DNA of 63,711 nucleotides, filler included, from Octopus bimaculoides (Eukaryota), in assembly GCF_001194135.2 (NCBI RefSeq). It is 7 parts of 6 records of this genome, joined end to end, with 100 filler letters (N's around TTAATTAATTAA, not from the genome) between each part and the next. Parts side by side here need not be neighbours in the genome. Positions count along the whole stretch, not along the records: positions 23,950 to 48,667 come from NC_068993.1; 6 more parts are not named here. One strand, written 5' to 3'. The translations under genes and the position numbers were made by a program. Every line of letters starts with the position of its first letter. The first letter of the stretch is position 1. Positions 25,940 to 48,667 of this stretch are shown here, in pieces. Below the pieces are notes generated by a model that worked only from the letters and a program-made list of their open reading frames with translations, was not told the DNA's origin and ran no database searches.

Positions 25940-26087
25940 TTCTGTGTGGTAAGAAGCTTCCCAACCACATGATTCTGAGTTCAGTCCCATTGCGTGGCAC
26001 CTTGGACAAGTCTTTTCTACTACAGCCTCGGGCCGACCAAAGCCCTGTAAGTGGATTTTGTAGACGGAAACTGAAAGAAACCCATCG

Positions 26088-26119
<32 letters not shown>

Positions 26120-26120
26120 C

Positions 26121-26157
<37 letters not shown>

Positions 26158-26306
26158 CGACGAGTTTCTTTCAGTTTCCGTCTACCAAATTCACTCATAA
26201 AGCTTTGGTCGGCTAGAGACTATAGTAGAAGACATCTATCTAAGTTGCCACGCAGTAAGACATCTGCCACGCAGTAGTTTCTTACCATACAGTCCTGCCT
26301 GTGCCT
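25940..26306. mobile_element. Two SINE C heads converging on a shared (TATC)n tract (plus 25940-26089, minus 26156-26306)
   Basis: tgcgtggcac..gtagacggaaactgaaagaaacccatcgta (ATCT)n tacgacgagtttctttcagtttccgtctacc..tgccacgca; arms of about 100 bp, roughly 80% complementary. Confidence 0.85.
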
Positions 26307-38939: not shown

Positions 38940-41540
38940 AAATATACGTATCATATACTATATAATACACTCACTCACACACATAGACATATGTAGGAAA
39001 CCTTCACTTTACGTAAGTAATGCGTTCCTGAAAATTTGAACGTGATGCAAAATTCTGTAATGAGAAGTTAGTTTTCCCATTGTTTGTCATATTACAGAGG
39101 AAGATTCTGTTCATACGGACATTTTTGAAAAAAAGAGAACGCAAAATAAACAACGAACCACAAGAAAATAATAGAACAAACAGCACAATCACCTTTATGC
39201 ATGAAAATAACTATGTCTAAAGATACACAGTACTATATAGACACGTATAAACACTAAAATATTTTACGAAGATCCTCTGTTCCAAACAAGAAATATTTCT
39301 CATTCGCCCGAAAGATTCCAAATTCTCATGACGTCAACATTATGCATGAGTGTGTGCAGGTGTGTACATGTGCATGTATGTGTGTGTGAGTTTGTGTGTG
39401 TGTGCATGTGTGCGCGCGCGAACGCGTGTAATGGACCTTCGTGCCGTAGGTTTGTTGTTGCAGAATACGCATAGAAGTTGAAAAGTCCACTGTTCCATTT
39501 GCTAGAAGGAGTTACAAAACTGCAGAGGTAGGAGAGAACTATGGCATATCTGTTATTAGAAATTCTTCAGACAGTTAGCCTAGTTAAATATAACTGGTGA
39601 GGCTGTATTGGCTACATTGTATTCATTGGTTTTGTTTTATCCATTTCGCTAAGAGGGAATAAATGTACTAGCATGAGAGATTAAAGAAGAGAATAGATGA
39701 TCACGAATAAGGGATTAGAAAACTAAAGAGTAAGATAACCTTAGAAGCAAAAAAGGAATCGTGCATTGAAAAATAGAATTGAGAAGCAAAAGAATAAATA
39801 AAAAATAAGGGAGAGTGGAGAGAAAGAGTGGATGACAAAGAGCAGATGGAGAGATTGAAGGAGAGAATAATATATAATTAAGCTTCCCTTAAGACTGACG
39901 TCCAAGGTTGGCATTATCACCGGGTTTAGGGATATAGGCAAGTAATTTTCAGTTTTCAGACTAACGTTATAGAAAAAAAGCAAATTCATCTGCTAGAATA
40001 TATGAACAATTTTATCAAAAGAAAAATGATCTACAAATCTATCCGAGTAGTGAGGTGAAACTAGCGAACAAATTCTGAGAGTTAGCATTGTAATGGGTAA
40101 TCGAAACGTAACCGTTAGGTAAACGATCGGACACCACGACCGAACCACGATAGTTTCACGTGATCGGTCTATTAAGCAGTCTGTCAGCGTGAAGCTGTCG
40201 CTTGATTAAATCTTCTATAACTTGTTCTCTTAAACGTTCGCGAGTGTTGTCATCTTTCTTCTTCACGTAGACAAGAAACATATTTTCATTTTTAAACTCA
40301 ACTAGCTACCATAACAGCAACGAAGAAACATCATAATATCACTTCTGATAGTATCTCGTGAGTGACTGAAAGTAAAAATATAGAATATAGAAGTAACCAC
40401 ATAAAGTTAGCAAAATTATGTAGAATATGTTTAACAAAAAAACATTTTAGTAAGCTTCACTTCTTGGAAGGACAATAAATTTAACATAATATAATTCAAA
40501 GAGCAAAAGCTTTTGACCAAATGTTTGAGCGGCTACTTAAAAAATTCCGAATTAACCATTAGAATAAATGCGGGACTGACCCGAGTACTTATGTGAAGAC
40601 AGGAAGGAAATATCTAGTGCCAGAATGTGTTAGTGTATTTGATACAAACATTGATTGCGACTGAAGTAGTCACAAAGATTTAGTACCAAAAAAGAAATGT
40701 ATATGTATAAAAATAATAGGTTTAACAAAGTGAAATATAATTCACTTTAAGGTAAAAATATCACCTGACAGCTATGAACTGAAAATGAATTACTATAATA
40801 ATTGTAGAAGTACACTGTCTGTTTCCGTTCTACGAAACCTTGATTTTCTGTGTCAGTCTTTAGGCATTACTATATTTTATTTGCTTCTGGTAATTATCGT
40901 TTATTTTAAATGCATTTATAAAGTTTCCTTGTAAGTCATGTTGTGAAAGAAAAAGAAGAAGTAGCAAATAAGAAAAATACAAATGTAAAAATCACATACT
41001 TAGTNNNNNNNNNNNNNNNNNNNNNNNNNNNNNNNNNNNNNNNNNNNNNNNNNNNNNNNNNNNNNNNNNNNNNNNNNNNNNNNNNNNNNNNNNNNNNNNN
41101 NNNNNNNNNNNNNNNNNNNNNNNNNNNNNNNNNNNNNNNNNNNNNNNNNNNNNNNNNNNNNNNNNNNNNNNNNNNNNNNNNNNNNNNNNNNNNNNNNNNN
41201 NNNNNNNNNNNNNNNNNNNNNNNNNNNNNNNNNNNNNNNNNNNNNNNNNNNNNNNNNNNNNNNNNNNNNNNNNNNNNNNNNNNNNNNNNNNNNNNNNNNN
41301 NNNNNNNNNNNNNNNNNNNNNNNNNNNNNNNNNNNNNNNNNNNNNNNNNNNNNNNNNNNNNNNNNNNNNNNNNNNNNNNNNNNNNNNNNNNNNNNNNNNN
41401 NNNNNNNNNNNNNNNNNNNNNNNNNNNNNNNNNNNNNNNNNNNNNNNNNNNNNNNNNNNNNNNNNTATATATATATATATATATATTCACATCAAGTATC
41501 TTGCTAACGAAATATAACAACGAATCACATATATATGTAT

Positions 41541-41820
41541 ATAGGTTGTGTGGTAAGGATTTTACTTCCCAACCACATGGTTCTGGGTTCAGTCCCGCTG
41601 TGTGGCACCGCGGGCAAGTGTCTTCTATAACCTCGAGCAGACGAAAGATTTGTGACTGGATATGATAGACAGAAACTGAAAGAAGCCTCTCGTATATACA
41701 TGCGTGCGCATATATGTATGTGTGTAAGTGTACGCGCGTGTGTGTGTGCGTATTTGTCTCCCACCACCGCTTGATAACCGGTGTTGGTGCATTCATATCC
41801 CCGTAATTTAGCAGTTCAGG
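41541..41820 (+). mobile_element. Composite SINE (C head + microsatellite + start of A module), 3'-truncated
   Basis: Same architecture as 21433-21791. Confidence 0.8.
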
Positions 41821-42993
41821 AAACATGCATATATATGAAAAAGAGAGGATAAAAGAACAGAGGTGAATAGAAATCGAAAAGTAAATAGTTAAATTAGGCA
41901 AGATGTAAAGATAAAAGCCAGTTACAGACATATAAAGAGACCAATAAGAGAGAAATATTGAATAAAACAATACAATGGTTGACACACACAGCATAGGCAG
42001 ACACACTCAACTTTACATTAAGAATCACGCAGAAACTAAAAGTGCGATTAATAGAAAACAAATGGTATATAAATAAACGCATATAGAATAGACAGATATA
42101 CGGGAGATGGTGACATCCTATGTTCCGGAGAAACAATAGTAGATTGAAATATGATTATGCTTCTCGTTACAATAAATAAGGCAAGAAGACTGAAAGAAAA
42201 TTTCCAGTATAATCACATGGCCAAAACATAGACTTGGTGTGGGAAAAAAATCTTATGAGTATACTCCATGTCCACGCCAAAATGGATAGCTTGATTTCAG
42301 AGCCGTTATTAACTGAGAGTATTACTTGTAACTTCACAGGAAATGTTTGTTGGTTCATAACTGAAAATACTGAATAGTAATACTTTAGGTGCTTTAAACA
42401 TGCATATTCTTCATTATGCAGAGTTTCTAGCTTTTGTGATACGGTTGGTGTACAGTAATAGTCATATTATATTAATGTGATCATGGACATTGCTTGAAGA
42501 GGAACTGAAGCTTAGAGAATTCATATTCTTGCGGAAACAGTACTGCTTGCGTTGTTCATTTCTGGAGTGGGCGAGGTGAAGATTTCAGCCGAGTAGAGTA
42601 AACTAGCGAAACACCTGTTACTGCTATTTATTTCCAAATGCATGAACAGAAAATTGAATGTTTTTTGGCATAGGTCAGCTGGAAATGCTCAGCGAAGTAG
42701 ATGCCATCTCGCCCAAGCTGAGTCAACGCAGAACGTTAGTCACTGATAAACACGTTGCACAAAAAACCAACTTCACTTCAGTTTATGCCAGTACATAATA
42801 TACTATAGGGTGCAAAGTCTTTGTCATATCTTTCTAAAAATCGTATTTGGTTTAGGCAAAAGGCCACACATTTGAGGGAATGGAGATAGTCTAGTCTATA
42901 CCATCGACTAAACTACTTGACTACTAATGTATTTTAGCGACTACAAAAAATGAAAGACGAATGTACCTCAATATATGTGTATGTATGCATGTA

Positions 42994-43320
42994 TGTGAAA
43001 GCACGTGGCTCAGTGGTTAGAGAGTCGGGCTTACAATTGTACACTATGGTTTCGATTTCCGGACCGGGCTGTGTGTAGGTTCTCAGCAAGACATTCATTT
43101 TCACGTTGCTCCAGTTGACTTAGCTTGTACAAATGACTTGTTACGTCAATAGTTCCAAGTTGTATCGGCCTTTGCCTTTCTCTTGGACAACATCGGTGGC
43201 ATGGAGAAGGAAAACAGCTATGCATGGGTGAGTGTTGGTCTTCCACAAACAACTTTAGCGGGACCTGTGCCTCGGAGAGAAAATTTCTGTGCAATCCCAT
43301 TGGAATTCTTGACCGAAATG
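42994..43320 (+). mobile_element. tRNA-derived SINE family E
   Basis: gtgaaagcacgtggctcagtggttagag (A box), ggtttcgatttcc (B box), agcaagacattcattttcacgttgctccag. Confidence 0.7.
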
Positions 43321-43349
43321 CACTTGTATATTTTATGTATGTATGTATG

Positions 43350-43378
<29 letters not shown>

Positions 43379-43381
<3 letters not shown>

Positions 43382-43593
43382 AAGTGTAGTATATTGCCAC
43401 TTAAGTGTGGCTGACCCCTAGGGGTGGATGTTACTGTTGCTTTTAGCCCCAGGAGGACATCTCCTCCAGCTGGTTTGACACAGTAGTGTGTCGATAAGCC
43501 AGCTGGAGGAGATGTCCTCCTGGGGCTAAAAGCAACGGTAACATCCACCCCTAGGGGTCAGCCACACTTAAGTGGCAATATACTACACTTTAT
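43379..43593. repeat. Near-perfect 215-nt palindrome/hairpin (95-bp arms, 1 mismatch)
   Basis: 43379-43473 is the reverse complement of 43499-43593 except one T/G; the 25-nt centre pairs further around a GTAG tetraloop with a 3-nt bulge. Confidence 0.97.
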
Positions 43594-43735
43594 CGTGCAG
43601 TTACTGTTAATACTTCATTTAGAGAATTAACATATATATATATATACACACATATACACGCACACGCACACACACACACACACATACATAGACACACACA
43701 CACACACATATATATATATACATATATATGGATAG

Positions 43736-44063
43736 TAATAAATGGAGCAAAACGCATGTCAATGAAATTTCCTTTAATTCCTACATATATGTTTCGAAAT
43801 AAATGATAGTACTTTCACAAAGAAGAAAGAGCTGCTGGGGTCCCTCATTTATTTCTCTTCAGGGAATTCATAATAAAACATGTAATAGCAAGACAAAACC
43901 GAAATAATGGGGTAACTTACGAGCTGAGATGTTACATGATCAGTGACCGTTAGAAGGTTTGTTTCCATATGTAATGTTTTGTGAAAGAACTATCACTTAT
44001 TTCGAAACATATATGTAGGAATTAAAGGAACTTTCATTGACATGTGTTTTTCTCCATTTATTA
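43736..44063. repeat. Inverted repeat, 86-bp arms (81/86 complementary), 156-bp spacer
   Basis: 43736-43821 vs 43978-44063. Confidence 0.95.
43776..43868 (-). ncRNA. Type I hammerhead ribozyme fold with all conserved core nucleotides
   Basis: AAUUCC CUGAAGA GAAAUAAAUGA [38-nt loop] UCAUUUAUUUC GAA ACAUAUAUGU A GGAAUU: 6-bp stem I, 11-bp stem II with G10.1-C11.1, palindromic stem III, GUA triplet; predicted cut between 43782 and 43781. Confidence 0.85.
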
Positions 44064-45310
44064 TTACCCATATCTTCTCAAAATGCATCACTTTAACTCG
44101 GTATATCAACCTGTAAAGCGGCTGGGATATCTTGTTTTTTAGTGTTATTTTGCTACCTCTGGTAACTATTAACGTATTTAAATTATCGAAAGTTTTAATA
44201 ACTGAGATAATATTGATATATACATAAACTAATACACACACACANNNNNNNNNNNNNNNNNNNNNNNNNNNNNNNNNNNNNNNNNNNNNNNNNNNNNNNN
44301 NNNNNNNNNNNNNNNNNNNNNNNNNNNNNNNNNNNNNNNNNNNNNNNNNNNNNNNNNNNNNNNNNNNNNNNNNNNNNNNNNNNNNNNNNNNNNNNNNNNN
44401 NNNNNNNNNNNNNNNNNNNNNNNNNNNNNNNNNNNNNNNNNNNNNNNNNNNNNNNNNNNNNNNNNNNNNNNNNNNNNNNNNNNNNNNNNNNNNNNNNNNN
44501 NNNNNNNNNNNNNNNNNNNNNNNNNNNNNNNNNNNNNNNNNNNNNNNNNNNNNNNNNNNNNNNNNNNNNNNNNNNNNNNNNNNNNNNNNNNNNNNNNNNN
44601 NNNNNNNNNNNNNNNNNNNNNNNNNNNNNNNNNNNNNNNNNNNNNNNNNNNNNNNNNNNNNNNNNNNNNNNNNNNNNNNNNNNNNNNNNNNNNNNNNNNN
44701 NNNNNNNNNNNNNNNNNNNNNNNNNNNNNNNNTACATATACACACCAGCTTAATTTAATTCGTCCTTAGTCGAAAGACGTGTTGTTATGTCCTTTTATCT
44801 TTATTGTGTTTGTGTAACATTGTTCGTTTTTTTCCGTCCTTGTTTTTGTATACATTCGCTGTTTCTTCCAAGGAATCTAATGCTCTTAGCTTAATTTTTC
44901 CTTGGGTCTGGTCAGATTGGATCAATATCGAGAATAACCAGCCGAAATTGCAAAGATAATCTGGATCTCGACTGAGGAAAGAAAACTGCGAATGACCTGT
45001 CCTTGTTTCCTTGTATCGTCTATCTGGATTTTTTATCCCTTTCTTGTATCACCTAACTGTCTGGATGTTTTGCGTTCTTGTCCCATCCTTTATTATTTAT
45101 TTTGTTTATTTTGTCTATTTTCATTTGTCTTGCCTGTTCATGTTCTGGTGCGCGCTGAATTTCCTCAAAGAACATTCTTTTCTTTTGTGGTTTGACCGTT
45201 GATGGTCGGTTTGTAGCGTAAAGGATGTCCACTTAGTGGTCATCCCCTCTCACATGTATGTAATATAATTTTTCTGAATTTTCTGAATTTTCTTTATGCT
45301 AGGCCACTGG

Positions 45311-48435: not shown

Positions 48436-48667
48436 TTTTTCAGACAAAAATCATGCCTCCTCATTGATATGACTGTCCCAATCGATATAAACGTATCTGT
48501 GAAGACCTACCAAAAACTGAGCAAATATAAAGATCTTGAAATAGAAATTAGCAAAATGTGGAATCTGAAGACGAAAACAATACCTATTGTCATAGGTGTC
48601 CTGGGAATGACAGCGAAACGGGCTGATTACTACCTAGCTCAGATACCAGGAAACCCCAAAATGGCTG
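48436..48667 (+). mobile_element. 5'-truncated R4/Dong-type retrotransposon, restriction-like endonuclease C-terminus
   Basis: KSCLLIDMTVPIDINVSVKTYQKLSKYKDLEIEISKMWNLKTKTIPIVIGVLG matches the RLE pattern ID..VP.D..K..KY..L..E...W....P.V.G.LG; starts directly after (AAT)n. Confidence 0.85.

What the first reader, a model, noticed from the sequence alone, without database searches (positions are those of the whole stretch)
43379..43593. Near-perfect 215-nt hairpin built from nested palindromes
Seen: 95-bp arms with one difference (a U-G wobble on the + strand); the centre continues pairing (CTGGTT/AGCCAG, 3-nt bulge, TGACACA/TGTGTCG) to a GTAG tetraloop. Each arm holds its own palindromes or mini-hairpins: CACTTAAGTG, ACCCCTAGGGGT, AGGAG-gacat-CTCCT, CCAGCTGG. 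It starts at a (TA)n tract, has no ORF and no clear TSD. Established: long, almost spacer-less palindromes are unstable (cruciforms) and, when transcribed, are strong Dicer/ADAR substrates. Inference: a recent snap-back duplication primed by the small GACAC/GTGTC hairpin, or a maintained hairpin-RNA/endo-siRNA locus, or a hairpin-ended mobile element. It lies only 143 bp from the hammerhead inverted repeat, which suggests a shared fold-back mechanism.
Basis: partly seen in the sequence, partly recalled or inferred. Interest (0 to 1): 0.75.

Follow-up and report, generated by a model that had tools for sequence, protein, structure and literature searches.

The report
Palindromic transposon-like hairpin in octopus DNA
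The 215-base near-perfect palindrome is really in the sequence, lies in repeat-rich non-coding DNA of an octopus genome, and is most likely an ordinary miniature inverted-repeat transposon rather than a hairpin-RNA gene; its copy number and read support could not be checked.

Summary
Window 43379-43593 is a 215-nt palindrome. Its 95-nt arms differ at one position, and pairing continues to a GTAG tetraloop (RNA fold -211 kcal/mol, z = -33). The piece comes from Octopus bimaculoides or a very close relative. It is non-coding DNA full of SINEs and microsatellites.

The element is flanked by TA on both sides, at the last TA of a (TA)n tract. It has no protein-family match, is richer in G+C than its surroundings, and carries more short internal palindromes than chance gives. 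A second, unrelated TA-flanked inverted repeat lies 132 nt away.

My best reading (about 0.5) is a palindromic MITE of Tc1/mariner type. If transcribed, it would be an ADAR hyper-editing substrate. A local fold-back duplication (about 0.27) cannot be excluded, because copy number could not be measured. No octopus genome was searchable, and the look-up of sequencing runs and read laying were both closed.

An endo-siRNA locus is disfavoured, because molluscs are reported to lack that pathway. Rfam gives no support for a hammerhead in the neighbouring repeat, and nothing supports a shared mechanism. Interest is low.

The parts
43379..43593 (.). Whole 215-nt palindrome (maximal inverted repeat, including the flanking ATA/TAT)
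43382..43590 (.). Putative element body, 209 bp, AAGTGTAGTATATTGCC...GGCAATATACTACACTT
   Evidence: Sequence reading; exact 46-nt terminal match on both strands
43380..43381 (.). Candidate left copy of a TA target-site duplication; it is the last TA of the (TA)n tract
   Evidence: Compatible but not diagnostic, because TA is itself palindromic
43591..43592 (.). Candidate right copy of the TA target-site duplication
43379..43473 (.). Left arm, 95 nt
43499..43593 (.). Right arm, 95 nt
43474..43498 (.). Imperfect centre: T.G wobble (43474/43498), 3-nt bulge, GACACA/TGTGTC stem, GTAG loop 43483-43486. The two halves differ here by one transition and a 3-nt indel
43435..43435 (.). The only arm difference: T here against C in the equivalent position of the other arm (G43537 on the + strand). 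ACTGTT versus ACCGTT, that is TpG versus CpG
43398..43407 (.). Internal 10-nt palindrome CACTTAAGTG (mirror copy 43565-43574). Its half-site AAGTGT repeats the element's terminal hexamer (43382 and 43403)
43414..43425 (.). Internal 12-nt palindrome ACCCCTAGGGGT (mirror copy 43547-43558)
43466..43473 (.). Internal 8-nt palindrome CCAGCTGG (mirror copy 43499-43506). Next to it lies the mini-hairpin GGAGGA-CATC-TCCTCC, 43452-43467
43441..43444 (+). T4 run in the left arm (mirror AAAA 43528-43531, which is T4 on the - strand). It is a potential Pol III stop on either strand
   Evidence: the termination role is inferred from general knowledge
43334..43381 (.). (TATG)n(TA)n microsatellite abutting the left end; probable insertion target

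Best explanation
The palindrome is a miniature inverted-repeat transposable element (MITE) of the cut-and-paste Tc1/mariner type. It is a 209-bp non-coding element made of two inverted repeats of about 100 bp joined almost head to head. I infer that a transposase supplied in trans inserted it at the last TA of a (TA)n tract, duplicating that TA.

Shown here: the palindromic anatomy, sharp ends, TA on both sides, no protein-family match, a composition unlike the surroundings, and internal motif structure.

Inferred: mobility, the identity of the transposase family, and membership of a multi-copy family.

It probably has no function of its own. If it lies in a transcript, either strand would fold into a duplex of about 105 bp. 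In octopus that duplex is expected to be hyper-edited by ADAR rather than diced into siRNAs.
For: - Exact boundaries with TA on each side, and an empty site that reconstructs as ...(TA)n|TCGTGCAG.
- Size of 209-215 bp. The one ORF that crosses it, and the nearby ORFs tested, match nothing in Pfam or the protein collection.
- G+C is 48.8% against 36.8% for the piece.
- Short palindromes inside each arm exceed chance (0.17% of shuffles), and the terminal hexamer AAGTGT recurs 21 nt inward. This looks like protein-binding half-sites.
- No tandem sub-repeats in the arms.
- A second, unrelated inverted-repeat element, also TA-flanked, sits 132 nt away in the same TA-rich stretch (arms 96 nt at 93%, 156-nt spacer).
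- The host is O. bimaculoides or a very close relative (97% identity of a neighbouring retroelement-like ORF to O. bimaculoides proteins). In O. vulgaris, among recently active insertions, Tc1-Mariner is the TIR group with most families and 65 MITE families are listed (PMC13282606).
- Self-complementary MITEs of this size are known. Examples are the ~200-bp palindromic Harbinger repeat of Xenopus, which is heavily edited (PMC5625713), and Made1 (PMC1784062).
- Octopus has an exceptionally high density of loci able to form near-perfect dsRNA (PMC5625713).
Against: - No second copy was found anywhere. There is none in the 24.7-kb piece and none in the metagenome, prokaryote-genome or viral collections. 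None of these holds an octopus genome, so copy number is simply unknown.
- The TA 'duplication' is weak evidence. TA is palindromic and the element abuts (TA)n, so a fold-back copy would show the same flanks.
- From my own knowledge, the termini (AAGTGTAG...) do not resemble the classical Tc1 or mariner ends.
- Pairing that runs down to a 4-nt loop is more than an internal deletion of an autonomous element would normally leave.
- No matching autonomous element was identified.
Confidence: 0.5

Rival explanations
1. Local fold-back (snap-back or template-switch) duplication. A pre-existing unique sequence next to the (TA)n tract was copied in inverted orientation, primed at or near the small GACACA/TGTGTC hairpin. 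The result is a single-copy palindrome with no mobility.
For: - Only one copy is known.
- Pairing continues to a tetraloop through a mini-hairpin that could prime synthesis.
- The arms differ by a single transition, which suggests a recent event.
- Fold-back and template-switch formation of inverted duplications is well documented (titles and abstracts listed: PMC3907307, PMC10766183).
- The flanks are equally well explained if the copy ran 3 nt into the (TA)n tract.
Against: - Simple extension from the hairpin predicts ...TGTGTC-AAACCAGCTGG. The observed sequence is ...TGTGTC-GATAAGCCAGCTGG, so a 3-nt insertion and a transition must have followed, while the 95-nt arms gained only one change.
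- The arm is G+C-rich for this region and unusually rich in internal palindromes, which is not expected of a random local segment.
- A second TA-flanked inverted repeat next door fits an insertion hot spot better.
Confidence: 0.27
2. Assembly or library artefact. One arm is real, and the inverted copy comes from chimeric fold-back molecules or an assembler error in a gapped short-read assembly.
For: - The piece is a gapped draft with 7 runs of N.
Against: - The arms are not identical. They differ by one transition, and the centre is asymmetric (a 3-nt indel, a second transition, a non-palindromic loop). A technical fold-back would give identical arms.
- The element lies inside a 2.8-kb gap-free stretch (41466-44244), 650 nt from the nearest gap and not at a contig end.
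- Unique sequence continues on both sides.
Confidence: 0.08
3. A maintained hairpin-RNA gene (hpRNA/endo-siRNA or miRNA-like precursor), kept by selection for its small-RNA products.
For: - The hairpin is extremely stable on both strands.
- Palindromic MITEs have given rise to miRNA genes, for example Made1 and mir-548 (PMC1784062).
- Sub-threshold Rfam matches to several miRNA-precursor models.
Against: - Molluscs, including O. bimaculoides, are reported to lack siRNA-type Dicer and Argonaute and endo-siRNA signatures (PMC12479628).
- All Rfam matches are far below the gathering scores (best 51 bits against 80), and they hit unrelated plant and animal families, as any long hairpin would.
- A stem of 105 bp, perfect apart from three wobbles and a 3-nt bulge, is unlike an animal miRNA precursor.
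- There is a T4 run in each arm.
- No nearby promoter or gene context was recognised.
Confidence: 0.05

Closest known systems
Palindromic Harbinger-type MITE of Xenopus tropicalis (~200-221 bp; PMC5625713)
   Same: It has nearly the same length. The whole element is self-complementary with a short loop and folds alone into tight dsRNA. It lives in a genome with an exceptional load of near-perfect dsRNA loci.
   Different: Harbinger elements make TAA/TTA (TWA) 3-bp duplications. Here the flanks read TAA on the left and TTA on the right, which is not a direct repeat, and only TA fits. Abundance and editing are documented for the frog family and untested here.
Made1 / hsa-mir-548 (mariner-derived MITE; PMC1784062)
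   Same: It is a Tc1/mariner-type MITE made almost only of two inverted repeats around a few central bases. Transcripts of either strand form a hairpin.
   Different: Made1 is 80 bp (37-bp repeats plus 6 bp), which is the size of a pre-miRNA. This element has a stem of about 105 bp, too long and too perfect for Drosha/Dicer miRNA processing. No parent transposon is known.
Stowaway-like MITEs born by miniaturisation of a Tc1/mariner element (Aedes aegypti; PMC3814204)
   Same: Small size, candidate TA target site, no coding capacity, and a possible origin from the ends of a longer element.
   Different: From my own knowledge, those families keep short terminal repeats and a non-palindromic interior. 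Here the palindrome runs to a tetraloop.
Fold-back inverted duplications and quasipalindromes (PMC3907307, PMC7999016)
   Same: Two adjacent inverted copies with a very short, imperfect centre. The cruciform or hairpin potential is expected to make the site fragile.
   Different: The described cases are mostly kilobase- to megabase-scale with unique spacers, or AT-rich palindromes. This one is 215 bp, 49% G+C, and ends sharply at TA.
Drosophila-type hpRNA/endo-siRNA loci
   Same: A long, near-perfect intramolecular hairpin.
   Different: The host clade is reported to lack the dedicated siRNA pathway (PMC12479628). Transcription and small RNAs are untested.

Membership tests
MITE (Tc1/mariner type) | Terminal inverted repeats | tested here: met
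   95-nt arms with 1 mismatch; the inverted repeat is 98 nt at 98% by the repeat finder
MITE (Tc1/mariner type) | Small size (under about 800 bp) and no coding capacity | tested here: met
   209-215 bp. The only ORF across it (71 aa, - strand) has no homologue or record
MITE (Tc1/mariner type) | TA target-site duplication | tested here: inconclusive
   TA 43380-81 and TA 43591-92 directly flank AAGTG...CACTT. TA is palindromic and the left flank is (TA)n, so a fold-back copy would look the same. The 3-bp (TAA vs TTA) and 8-bp alternatives fail; TTAA occurs only inside the arms, next to GTG rather than a piggyBac-type CCC end
MITE (Tc1/mariner type) | Many dispersed copies with different flanks | not testable with these tools
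   No octopus genome is searchable. There are no further copies in the 24.7-kb piece and none in the collections scanned.
MITE (Tc1/mariner type) | Ends shared with an autonomous transposase-encoding element | not testable with these tools
   No transposase domain in the neighbouring ORFs tested. No repeat library was available
hpRNA / endo-siRNA locus | Long intramolecular dsRNA hairpin | tested here: met
   -211 kcal/mol on the + strand and -202 on the - strand
hpRNA / endo-siRNA locus | Host has a dedicated siRNA Dicer/Argonaute pathway and makes endo-siRNAs | tested here: not met
   From the literature only: none detected in 32 molluscs, with O. bimaculoides small-RNA data included (PMC12479628)
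hpRNA / endo-siRNA locus | Transcription, and 21-23-nt duplex reads from both arms | not testable with these tools
Curated miRNA precursor families (Rfam) | Score at or above the family's gathering threshold | tested here: not met
   Best matches are MIR904 at 51.1 bits (threshold 80) and mir-2767 at 48.8 (threshold 69). These are generic hairpin matches on both strands
Foldback (FB-type) elements | Long terminal inverted repeats built from tandem sub-repeats | tested here: not met
   TRF finds no tandem array inside 43382-43590, only the flanking microsatellites
ADAR hyper-editing substrate | Long, nearly perfect dsRNA formed within one transcript | tested here: met
   Met structurally on either strand. 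Such structures are the hyper-editing targets, and octopus ranks highest for hyper-editing (PMC5625713)
ADAR hyper-editing substrate | Transcribed, with clustered A-to-G differences in RNA reads | not testable with these tools

The most novel reading that the evidence does not exclude
The element belongs to an abundant, so far uncatalogued family of fully self-complementary MITEs in octopods. That family would be a major source of the exceptionally numerous near-perfect dsRNA loci and of the record ADAR hyper-editing reported for O. bimaculoides, as the palindromic Harbinger repeat is in Xenopus.
Probability: 0.12. Interest if true: 0.5.

Novelty: new member of a known kind. Interest (0 to 1): 0.2.

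Why it matters
On its own this is a routine repeat annotation. It would matter only if the element belongs to a large family. Self-folding MITEs could then help explain why octopus transcripts carry so much near-perfect dsRNA and hyper-editing (PMC5625713), a point left open there because no repeat annotation was available. If it is single-copy instead, it would be a clean small example of germline palindrome formation next to a microsatellite, and a likely fragile or polymorphic site.

Tried and rejected
**Read evidence**
I tried it once, with the two O. bimaculoides genomic runs named in bioRxiv 10.1101/2021.01.24.427974.
- So there is no check of assembly, depth, transcription, editing or small RNAs.

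**Searches for further copies**
- Exact-pattern scans with three different 26-28-nt arm segments found nothing: metagenome contigs twice, genome contigs twice, viral contigs once. This was expected, because none of these holds an octopus genome.
- The 56-aa translation of the ORF crossing the palindrome had no homologue. The exact ORFs 43333-43548(-) and 43031-43300(-) are not on record. The protein collection holds O. bimaculoides only as UniRef entries, so this says nothing about copy number.
- Contigs fetched through relatives of the neighbouring retroelement-like ORF are Tara Oceans and other ENA eukaryotic contigs, not octopus. They hold no arm match.
- The supplement of the O. vulgaris repeat paper holds no consensus library.

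**Other negatives**
- Rfam gives only sub-threshold miRNA-hairpin and microsatellite matches, and no hammerhead.
- ARAGORN finds no tRNA in 41466-44244.
- Pfam finds no domain in 20 ORFs of the piece. One search failed on coordinates that contained stop codons.

**Readings rejected**
- Harbinger (TAA on the left versus TTA on the right is not a direct repeat).
- hAT (no 8-bp duplication).
- piggyBac (TTAA occurs only inside the arms, next to GTG rather than a CCC end).
- Foldback elements (no tandem sub-repeats).
- Two independent insertions head to head (the arms end at exactly mirrored positions and are 99% alike).
- I also considered reading the CpG/TpG arm difference as methyl-cytosine decay. 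Octopus transposons are largely unmethylated (PMC9476566), so I use it only as evidence that the arms are distinct genomic sequences.

Full report
**What is there**

Window 43379-43593 reads as its own reverse complement except at 19 positions. All but two of these lie in the central 25 nt.

- The arms 43379-43473 and 43499-43593 (95 nt each) differ at one pair, T43435 against G43537.
- The centre keeps pairing. CTGGTT/AGCCAG includes a T.G wobble. A 3-nt bulge follows, then GACACA/TGTGTC closed by the loop GTAG.
- The predicted hairpin is far outside chance. RNA + strand is -211 kcal/mol (z = -33), RNA - strand is -202 (z = -31), and DNA is -130 (z = -30). No shuffle of 200 came near in any case.

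**Nested palindromes**

One 92-nt arm contains perfect palindromes of 12 nt (ACCCCTAGGGGT), 10 nt (CACTTAAGTG) and 8 nt (CCAGCTGG). It also holds the mini-hairpin GGAGGA-CATC-TCCTCC.

- Only 0.17% of 20,000 dinucleotide-preserving shuffles carry both a >=12-nt and a >=10-nt palindrome. Only 0.03% carry all three.
- The rest of the piece has 34 non-simple palindromes of >=10 nt in 23 kb, or about 0.14 expected per arm.
- The terminal hexamer AAGTGT (43382) recurs at 43403 as a half-site of the 10-nt palindrome.
- A single arm does not fold unusually well on its own (z = -1.2). These are short sites, not extra structure.
- The arms contain no tandem sub-repeats.

**Where it lies**

A retroelement-like ORF at the right end of the piece (48436-48666) is 97% identical to an uncharacterised Octopus bimaculoides protein and 80-89% identical to a dozen more. 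The piece therefore comes from that species or a very close relative.

- The piece is 36.8% G+C and has seven runs of N. It is full of microsatellites and SINE-like repeats.
- None of 20 ORFs matches a Pfam family.
- The palindrome lies in a gap-free stretch, 41466-44244.
- To its left is a SINE-like repeat with, by my own reading, a tRNA-like head (43003-~43333). ARAGORN calls no tRNA there. This repeat is followed by (TATG)n(TA)n, 43334-43381.
- To its right are 37 nt of unique sequence, then (AT)n(AC)n, then a second inverted repeat. That repeat spans 43726-44073, with 96-nt arms at 93% and a 156-nt spacer.

**Ends**

The body AAGTGTAG...CTACACTT (43382-43590) is flanked by TA on both sides. 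Removing the body and one TA restores ...(TA)n-TCGTGCAG.

- This is what a Tc1/mariner-type insertion at the last TA of the tract would leave.
- The test is weak. TA is palindromic, and a fold-back copy running 3 nt into the (TA)n tract would give the same picture.
- The other duplications do not fit. TAA on the left and TTA on the right are not a direct repeat. There is no 8-bp repeat. TTAA occurs only inside the arms.

**Real or artefact?**

Reads could not be consulted. The look-up of sequencing runs and read laying were both closed. Three points in the sequence itself argue for a real structure.

- The arms are distinct. They read ACTGTT against ACCGTT, a transition at a CpG.
- The centre is asymmetric, with a 3-nt indel and a second transition.
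- The element sits 650 nt from the nearest gap, not at a contig end.

Octopus transposons are largely unmethylated (PMC9476566). I therefore do not read the CpG context as proof of methyl-cytosine decay.

**Copies elsewhere**

None was found, but nothing searchable contains an octopus genome.

- The arm occurs only twice in the piece, even with blastn at word size 7.
- Five exact-pattern scans of the metagenome, prokaryotic and viral collections were empty.
- The ORF that crosses the palindrome has no homologue and no record. The protein collection holds O. bimaculoides only as UniRef entries.

Copy number is the decisive unknown.

**Interpretation**

I put about 0.5 on a palindromic MITE of Tc1/mariner type. 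The reasons are:

- sharp TA-flanked ends;
- the right size, with no protein-family match;
- G+C of 48.8% in a 36.8% background;
- site-like internal palindromes that repeat the terminal motif;
- an unrelated, likewise TA-flanked inverted-repeat element 132 nt away;
- a host lineage rich in such elements. In O. vulgaris, among recently active insertions, Tc1-Mariner is the TIR group with most families, and 65 MITE families are listed (PMC13282606).

Fully self-complementary MITEs of this size are known. The ~200-bp palindromic Harbinger repeat is the most heavily edited repeat of Xenopus. The same study found that O. bimaculoides has both the strongest hyper-editing signal and an exceptional density of loci able to form near-perfect dsRNA (PMC5625713). 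Made1, the source of mir-548, is a smaller mariner-derived example (PMC1784062).

The main rival (about 0.27) is a local fold-back duplication. It explains the single known copy and the pairing down to a tetraloop. It needs a later 3-nt insertion and a transition at the centre, while the arms gained only one change. It also does not account for the arm's unusual composition.

An assembly artefact gets about 0.08.

A maintained hairpin-RNA gene gets about 0.05, for four reasons.

- Molluscs, O. bimaculoides included, show no siRNA-type Dicer or Argonaute and no endo-siRNA signature (PMC12479628).
- The Rfam matches are generic and below threshold.
- The stem is far too long and perfect for an animal miRNA precursor.
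- Each arm carries a T4 run.

**How it would work**

As DNA it is a passive passenger and a potential cruciform or hairpin site. By the general rules for palindromes, that makes it a likely fragile or polymorphic site (PMC7999016).

As RNA, read-through transcripts of either strand would fold into a duplex of about 105 bp. In octopus the expected fate is ADAR hyper-editing (PMC5625713), not dicing. Both points are inferences, because transcription was not testable.

**The neighbouring repeat**

The proposed link to a 'hammerhead inverted repeat' is not supported. The two repeats share no sequence. No hammerhead family matches 43360-44244 even at E <= 10. Two TA-flanked elements in one TA-rich stretch fit a shared target preference better than a shared fold-back event.

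**Verdict**

This is a real and striking hairpin, but most probably an ordinary member of a well-known kind of element. Interest is low unless a genome-wide search shows a large self-folding family.

Noticed in passing
window 43726-44073: Second inverted-repeat element: 96-nt arms 93% complementary with a 156-nt spacer, flanked by ATAT on both sides (compatible with a TA duplication). It is unrelated in sequence to the palindrome. RNA fold z = -15.8. No Rfam hammerhead or any other family matches it, even at E <= 10.
   Followed up: partly
window 43003-43381 and 42978-42996: SINE-like repeat with, by my own reading, a tRNA-like head carrying A/B-box-like motifs. It is followed by (TATG)n(TA)n. 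A short (TGTA)n also sits just upstream of its head, so it may have inserted into a microsatellite. ARAGORN calls no tRNA. There is no other copy in the piece.
   Followed up: partly
window 25940-26290: Two diverged SINE-like fragments in inverted orientation (arms 25984-26089 / 26156-26261, 79% complementary) around a (TATC)n microsatellite. This is another hairpin-forming arrangement, here made from two repeat copies rather than a true palindrome.
   Followed up: no
window 41545-41820: Another SINE-like repeat (GGTTGTGTGGTAAGGATTTTACTTCCCAACCACATGG...) with an internal GT/GC-rich microsatellite. Its head resembles the fragments at 25940-26290.
   Followed up: no
window 43334-43381 versus 43632-43729: The microsatellites on the two sides of the palindrome are mirror-oriented: (TATG)n(TA)n on the left and (AT)n(AC)n on the right, 73-85% complementary. 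Inverted TG/CA microsatellite pairs are common in the piece and cause many sub-threshold mir-297, mir-466 and mir-3149 Rfam matches. This is probably coincidence.
   Followed up: partly
window 48436-48666: Retroelement-like ORF cut by the piece's edge; relatives of it lie beside RVT_1 genes on the contigs fetched. It is 97% identical to an O. bimaculoides UniRef protein. One hit at 76% identity is labelled 'hypothetical protein, Escherichia coli' (P0002), probably contamination or a mislabelled record. Relatives at about 60% identity lie on Tara Oceans eukaryotic contigs.
   Followed up: partly
window 23950-24768 (- strand): ORF fragments with a reverse-transcriptase-like YIDD motif (…LYGRYIDDCIG…), interrupted by an N gap. 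No Pfam family matched, so the assignment rests on my reading of the motif only.
   Followed up: partly
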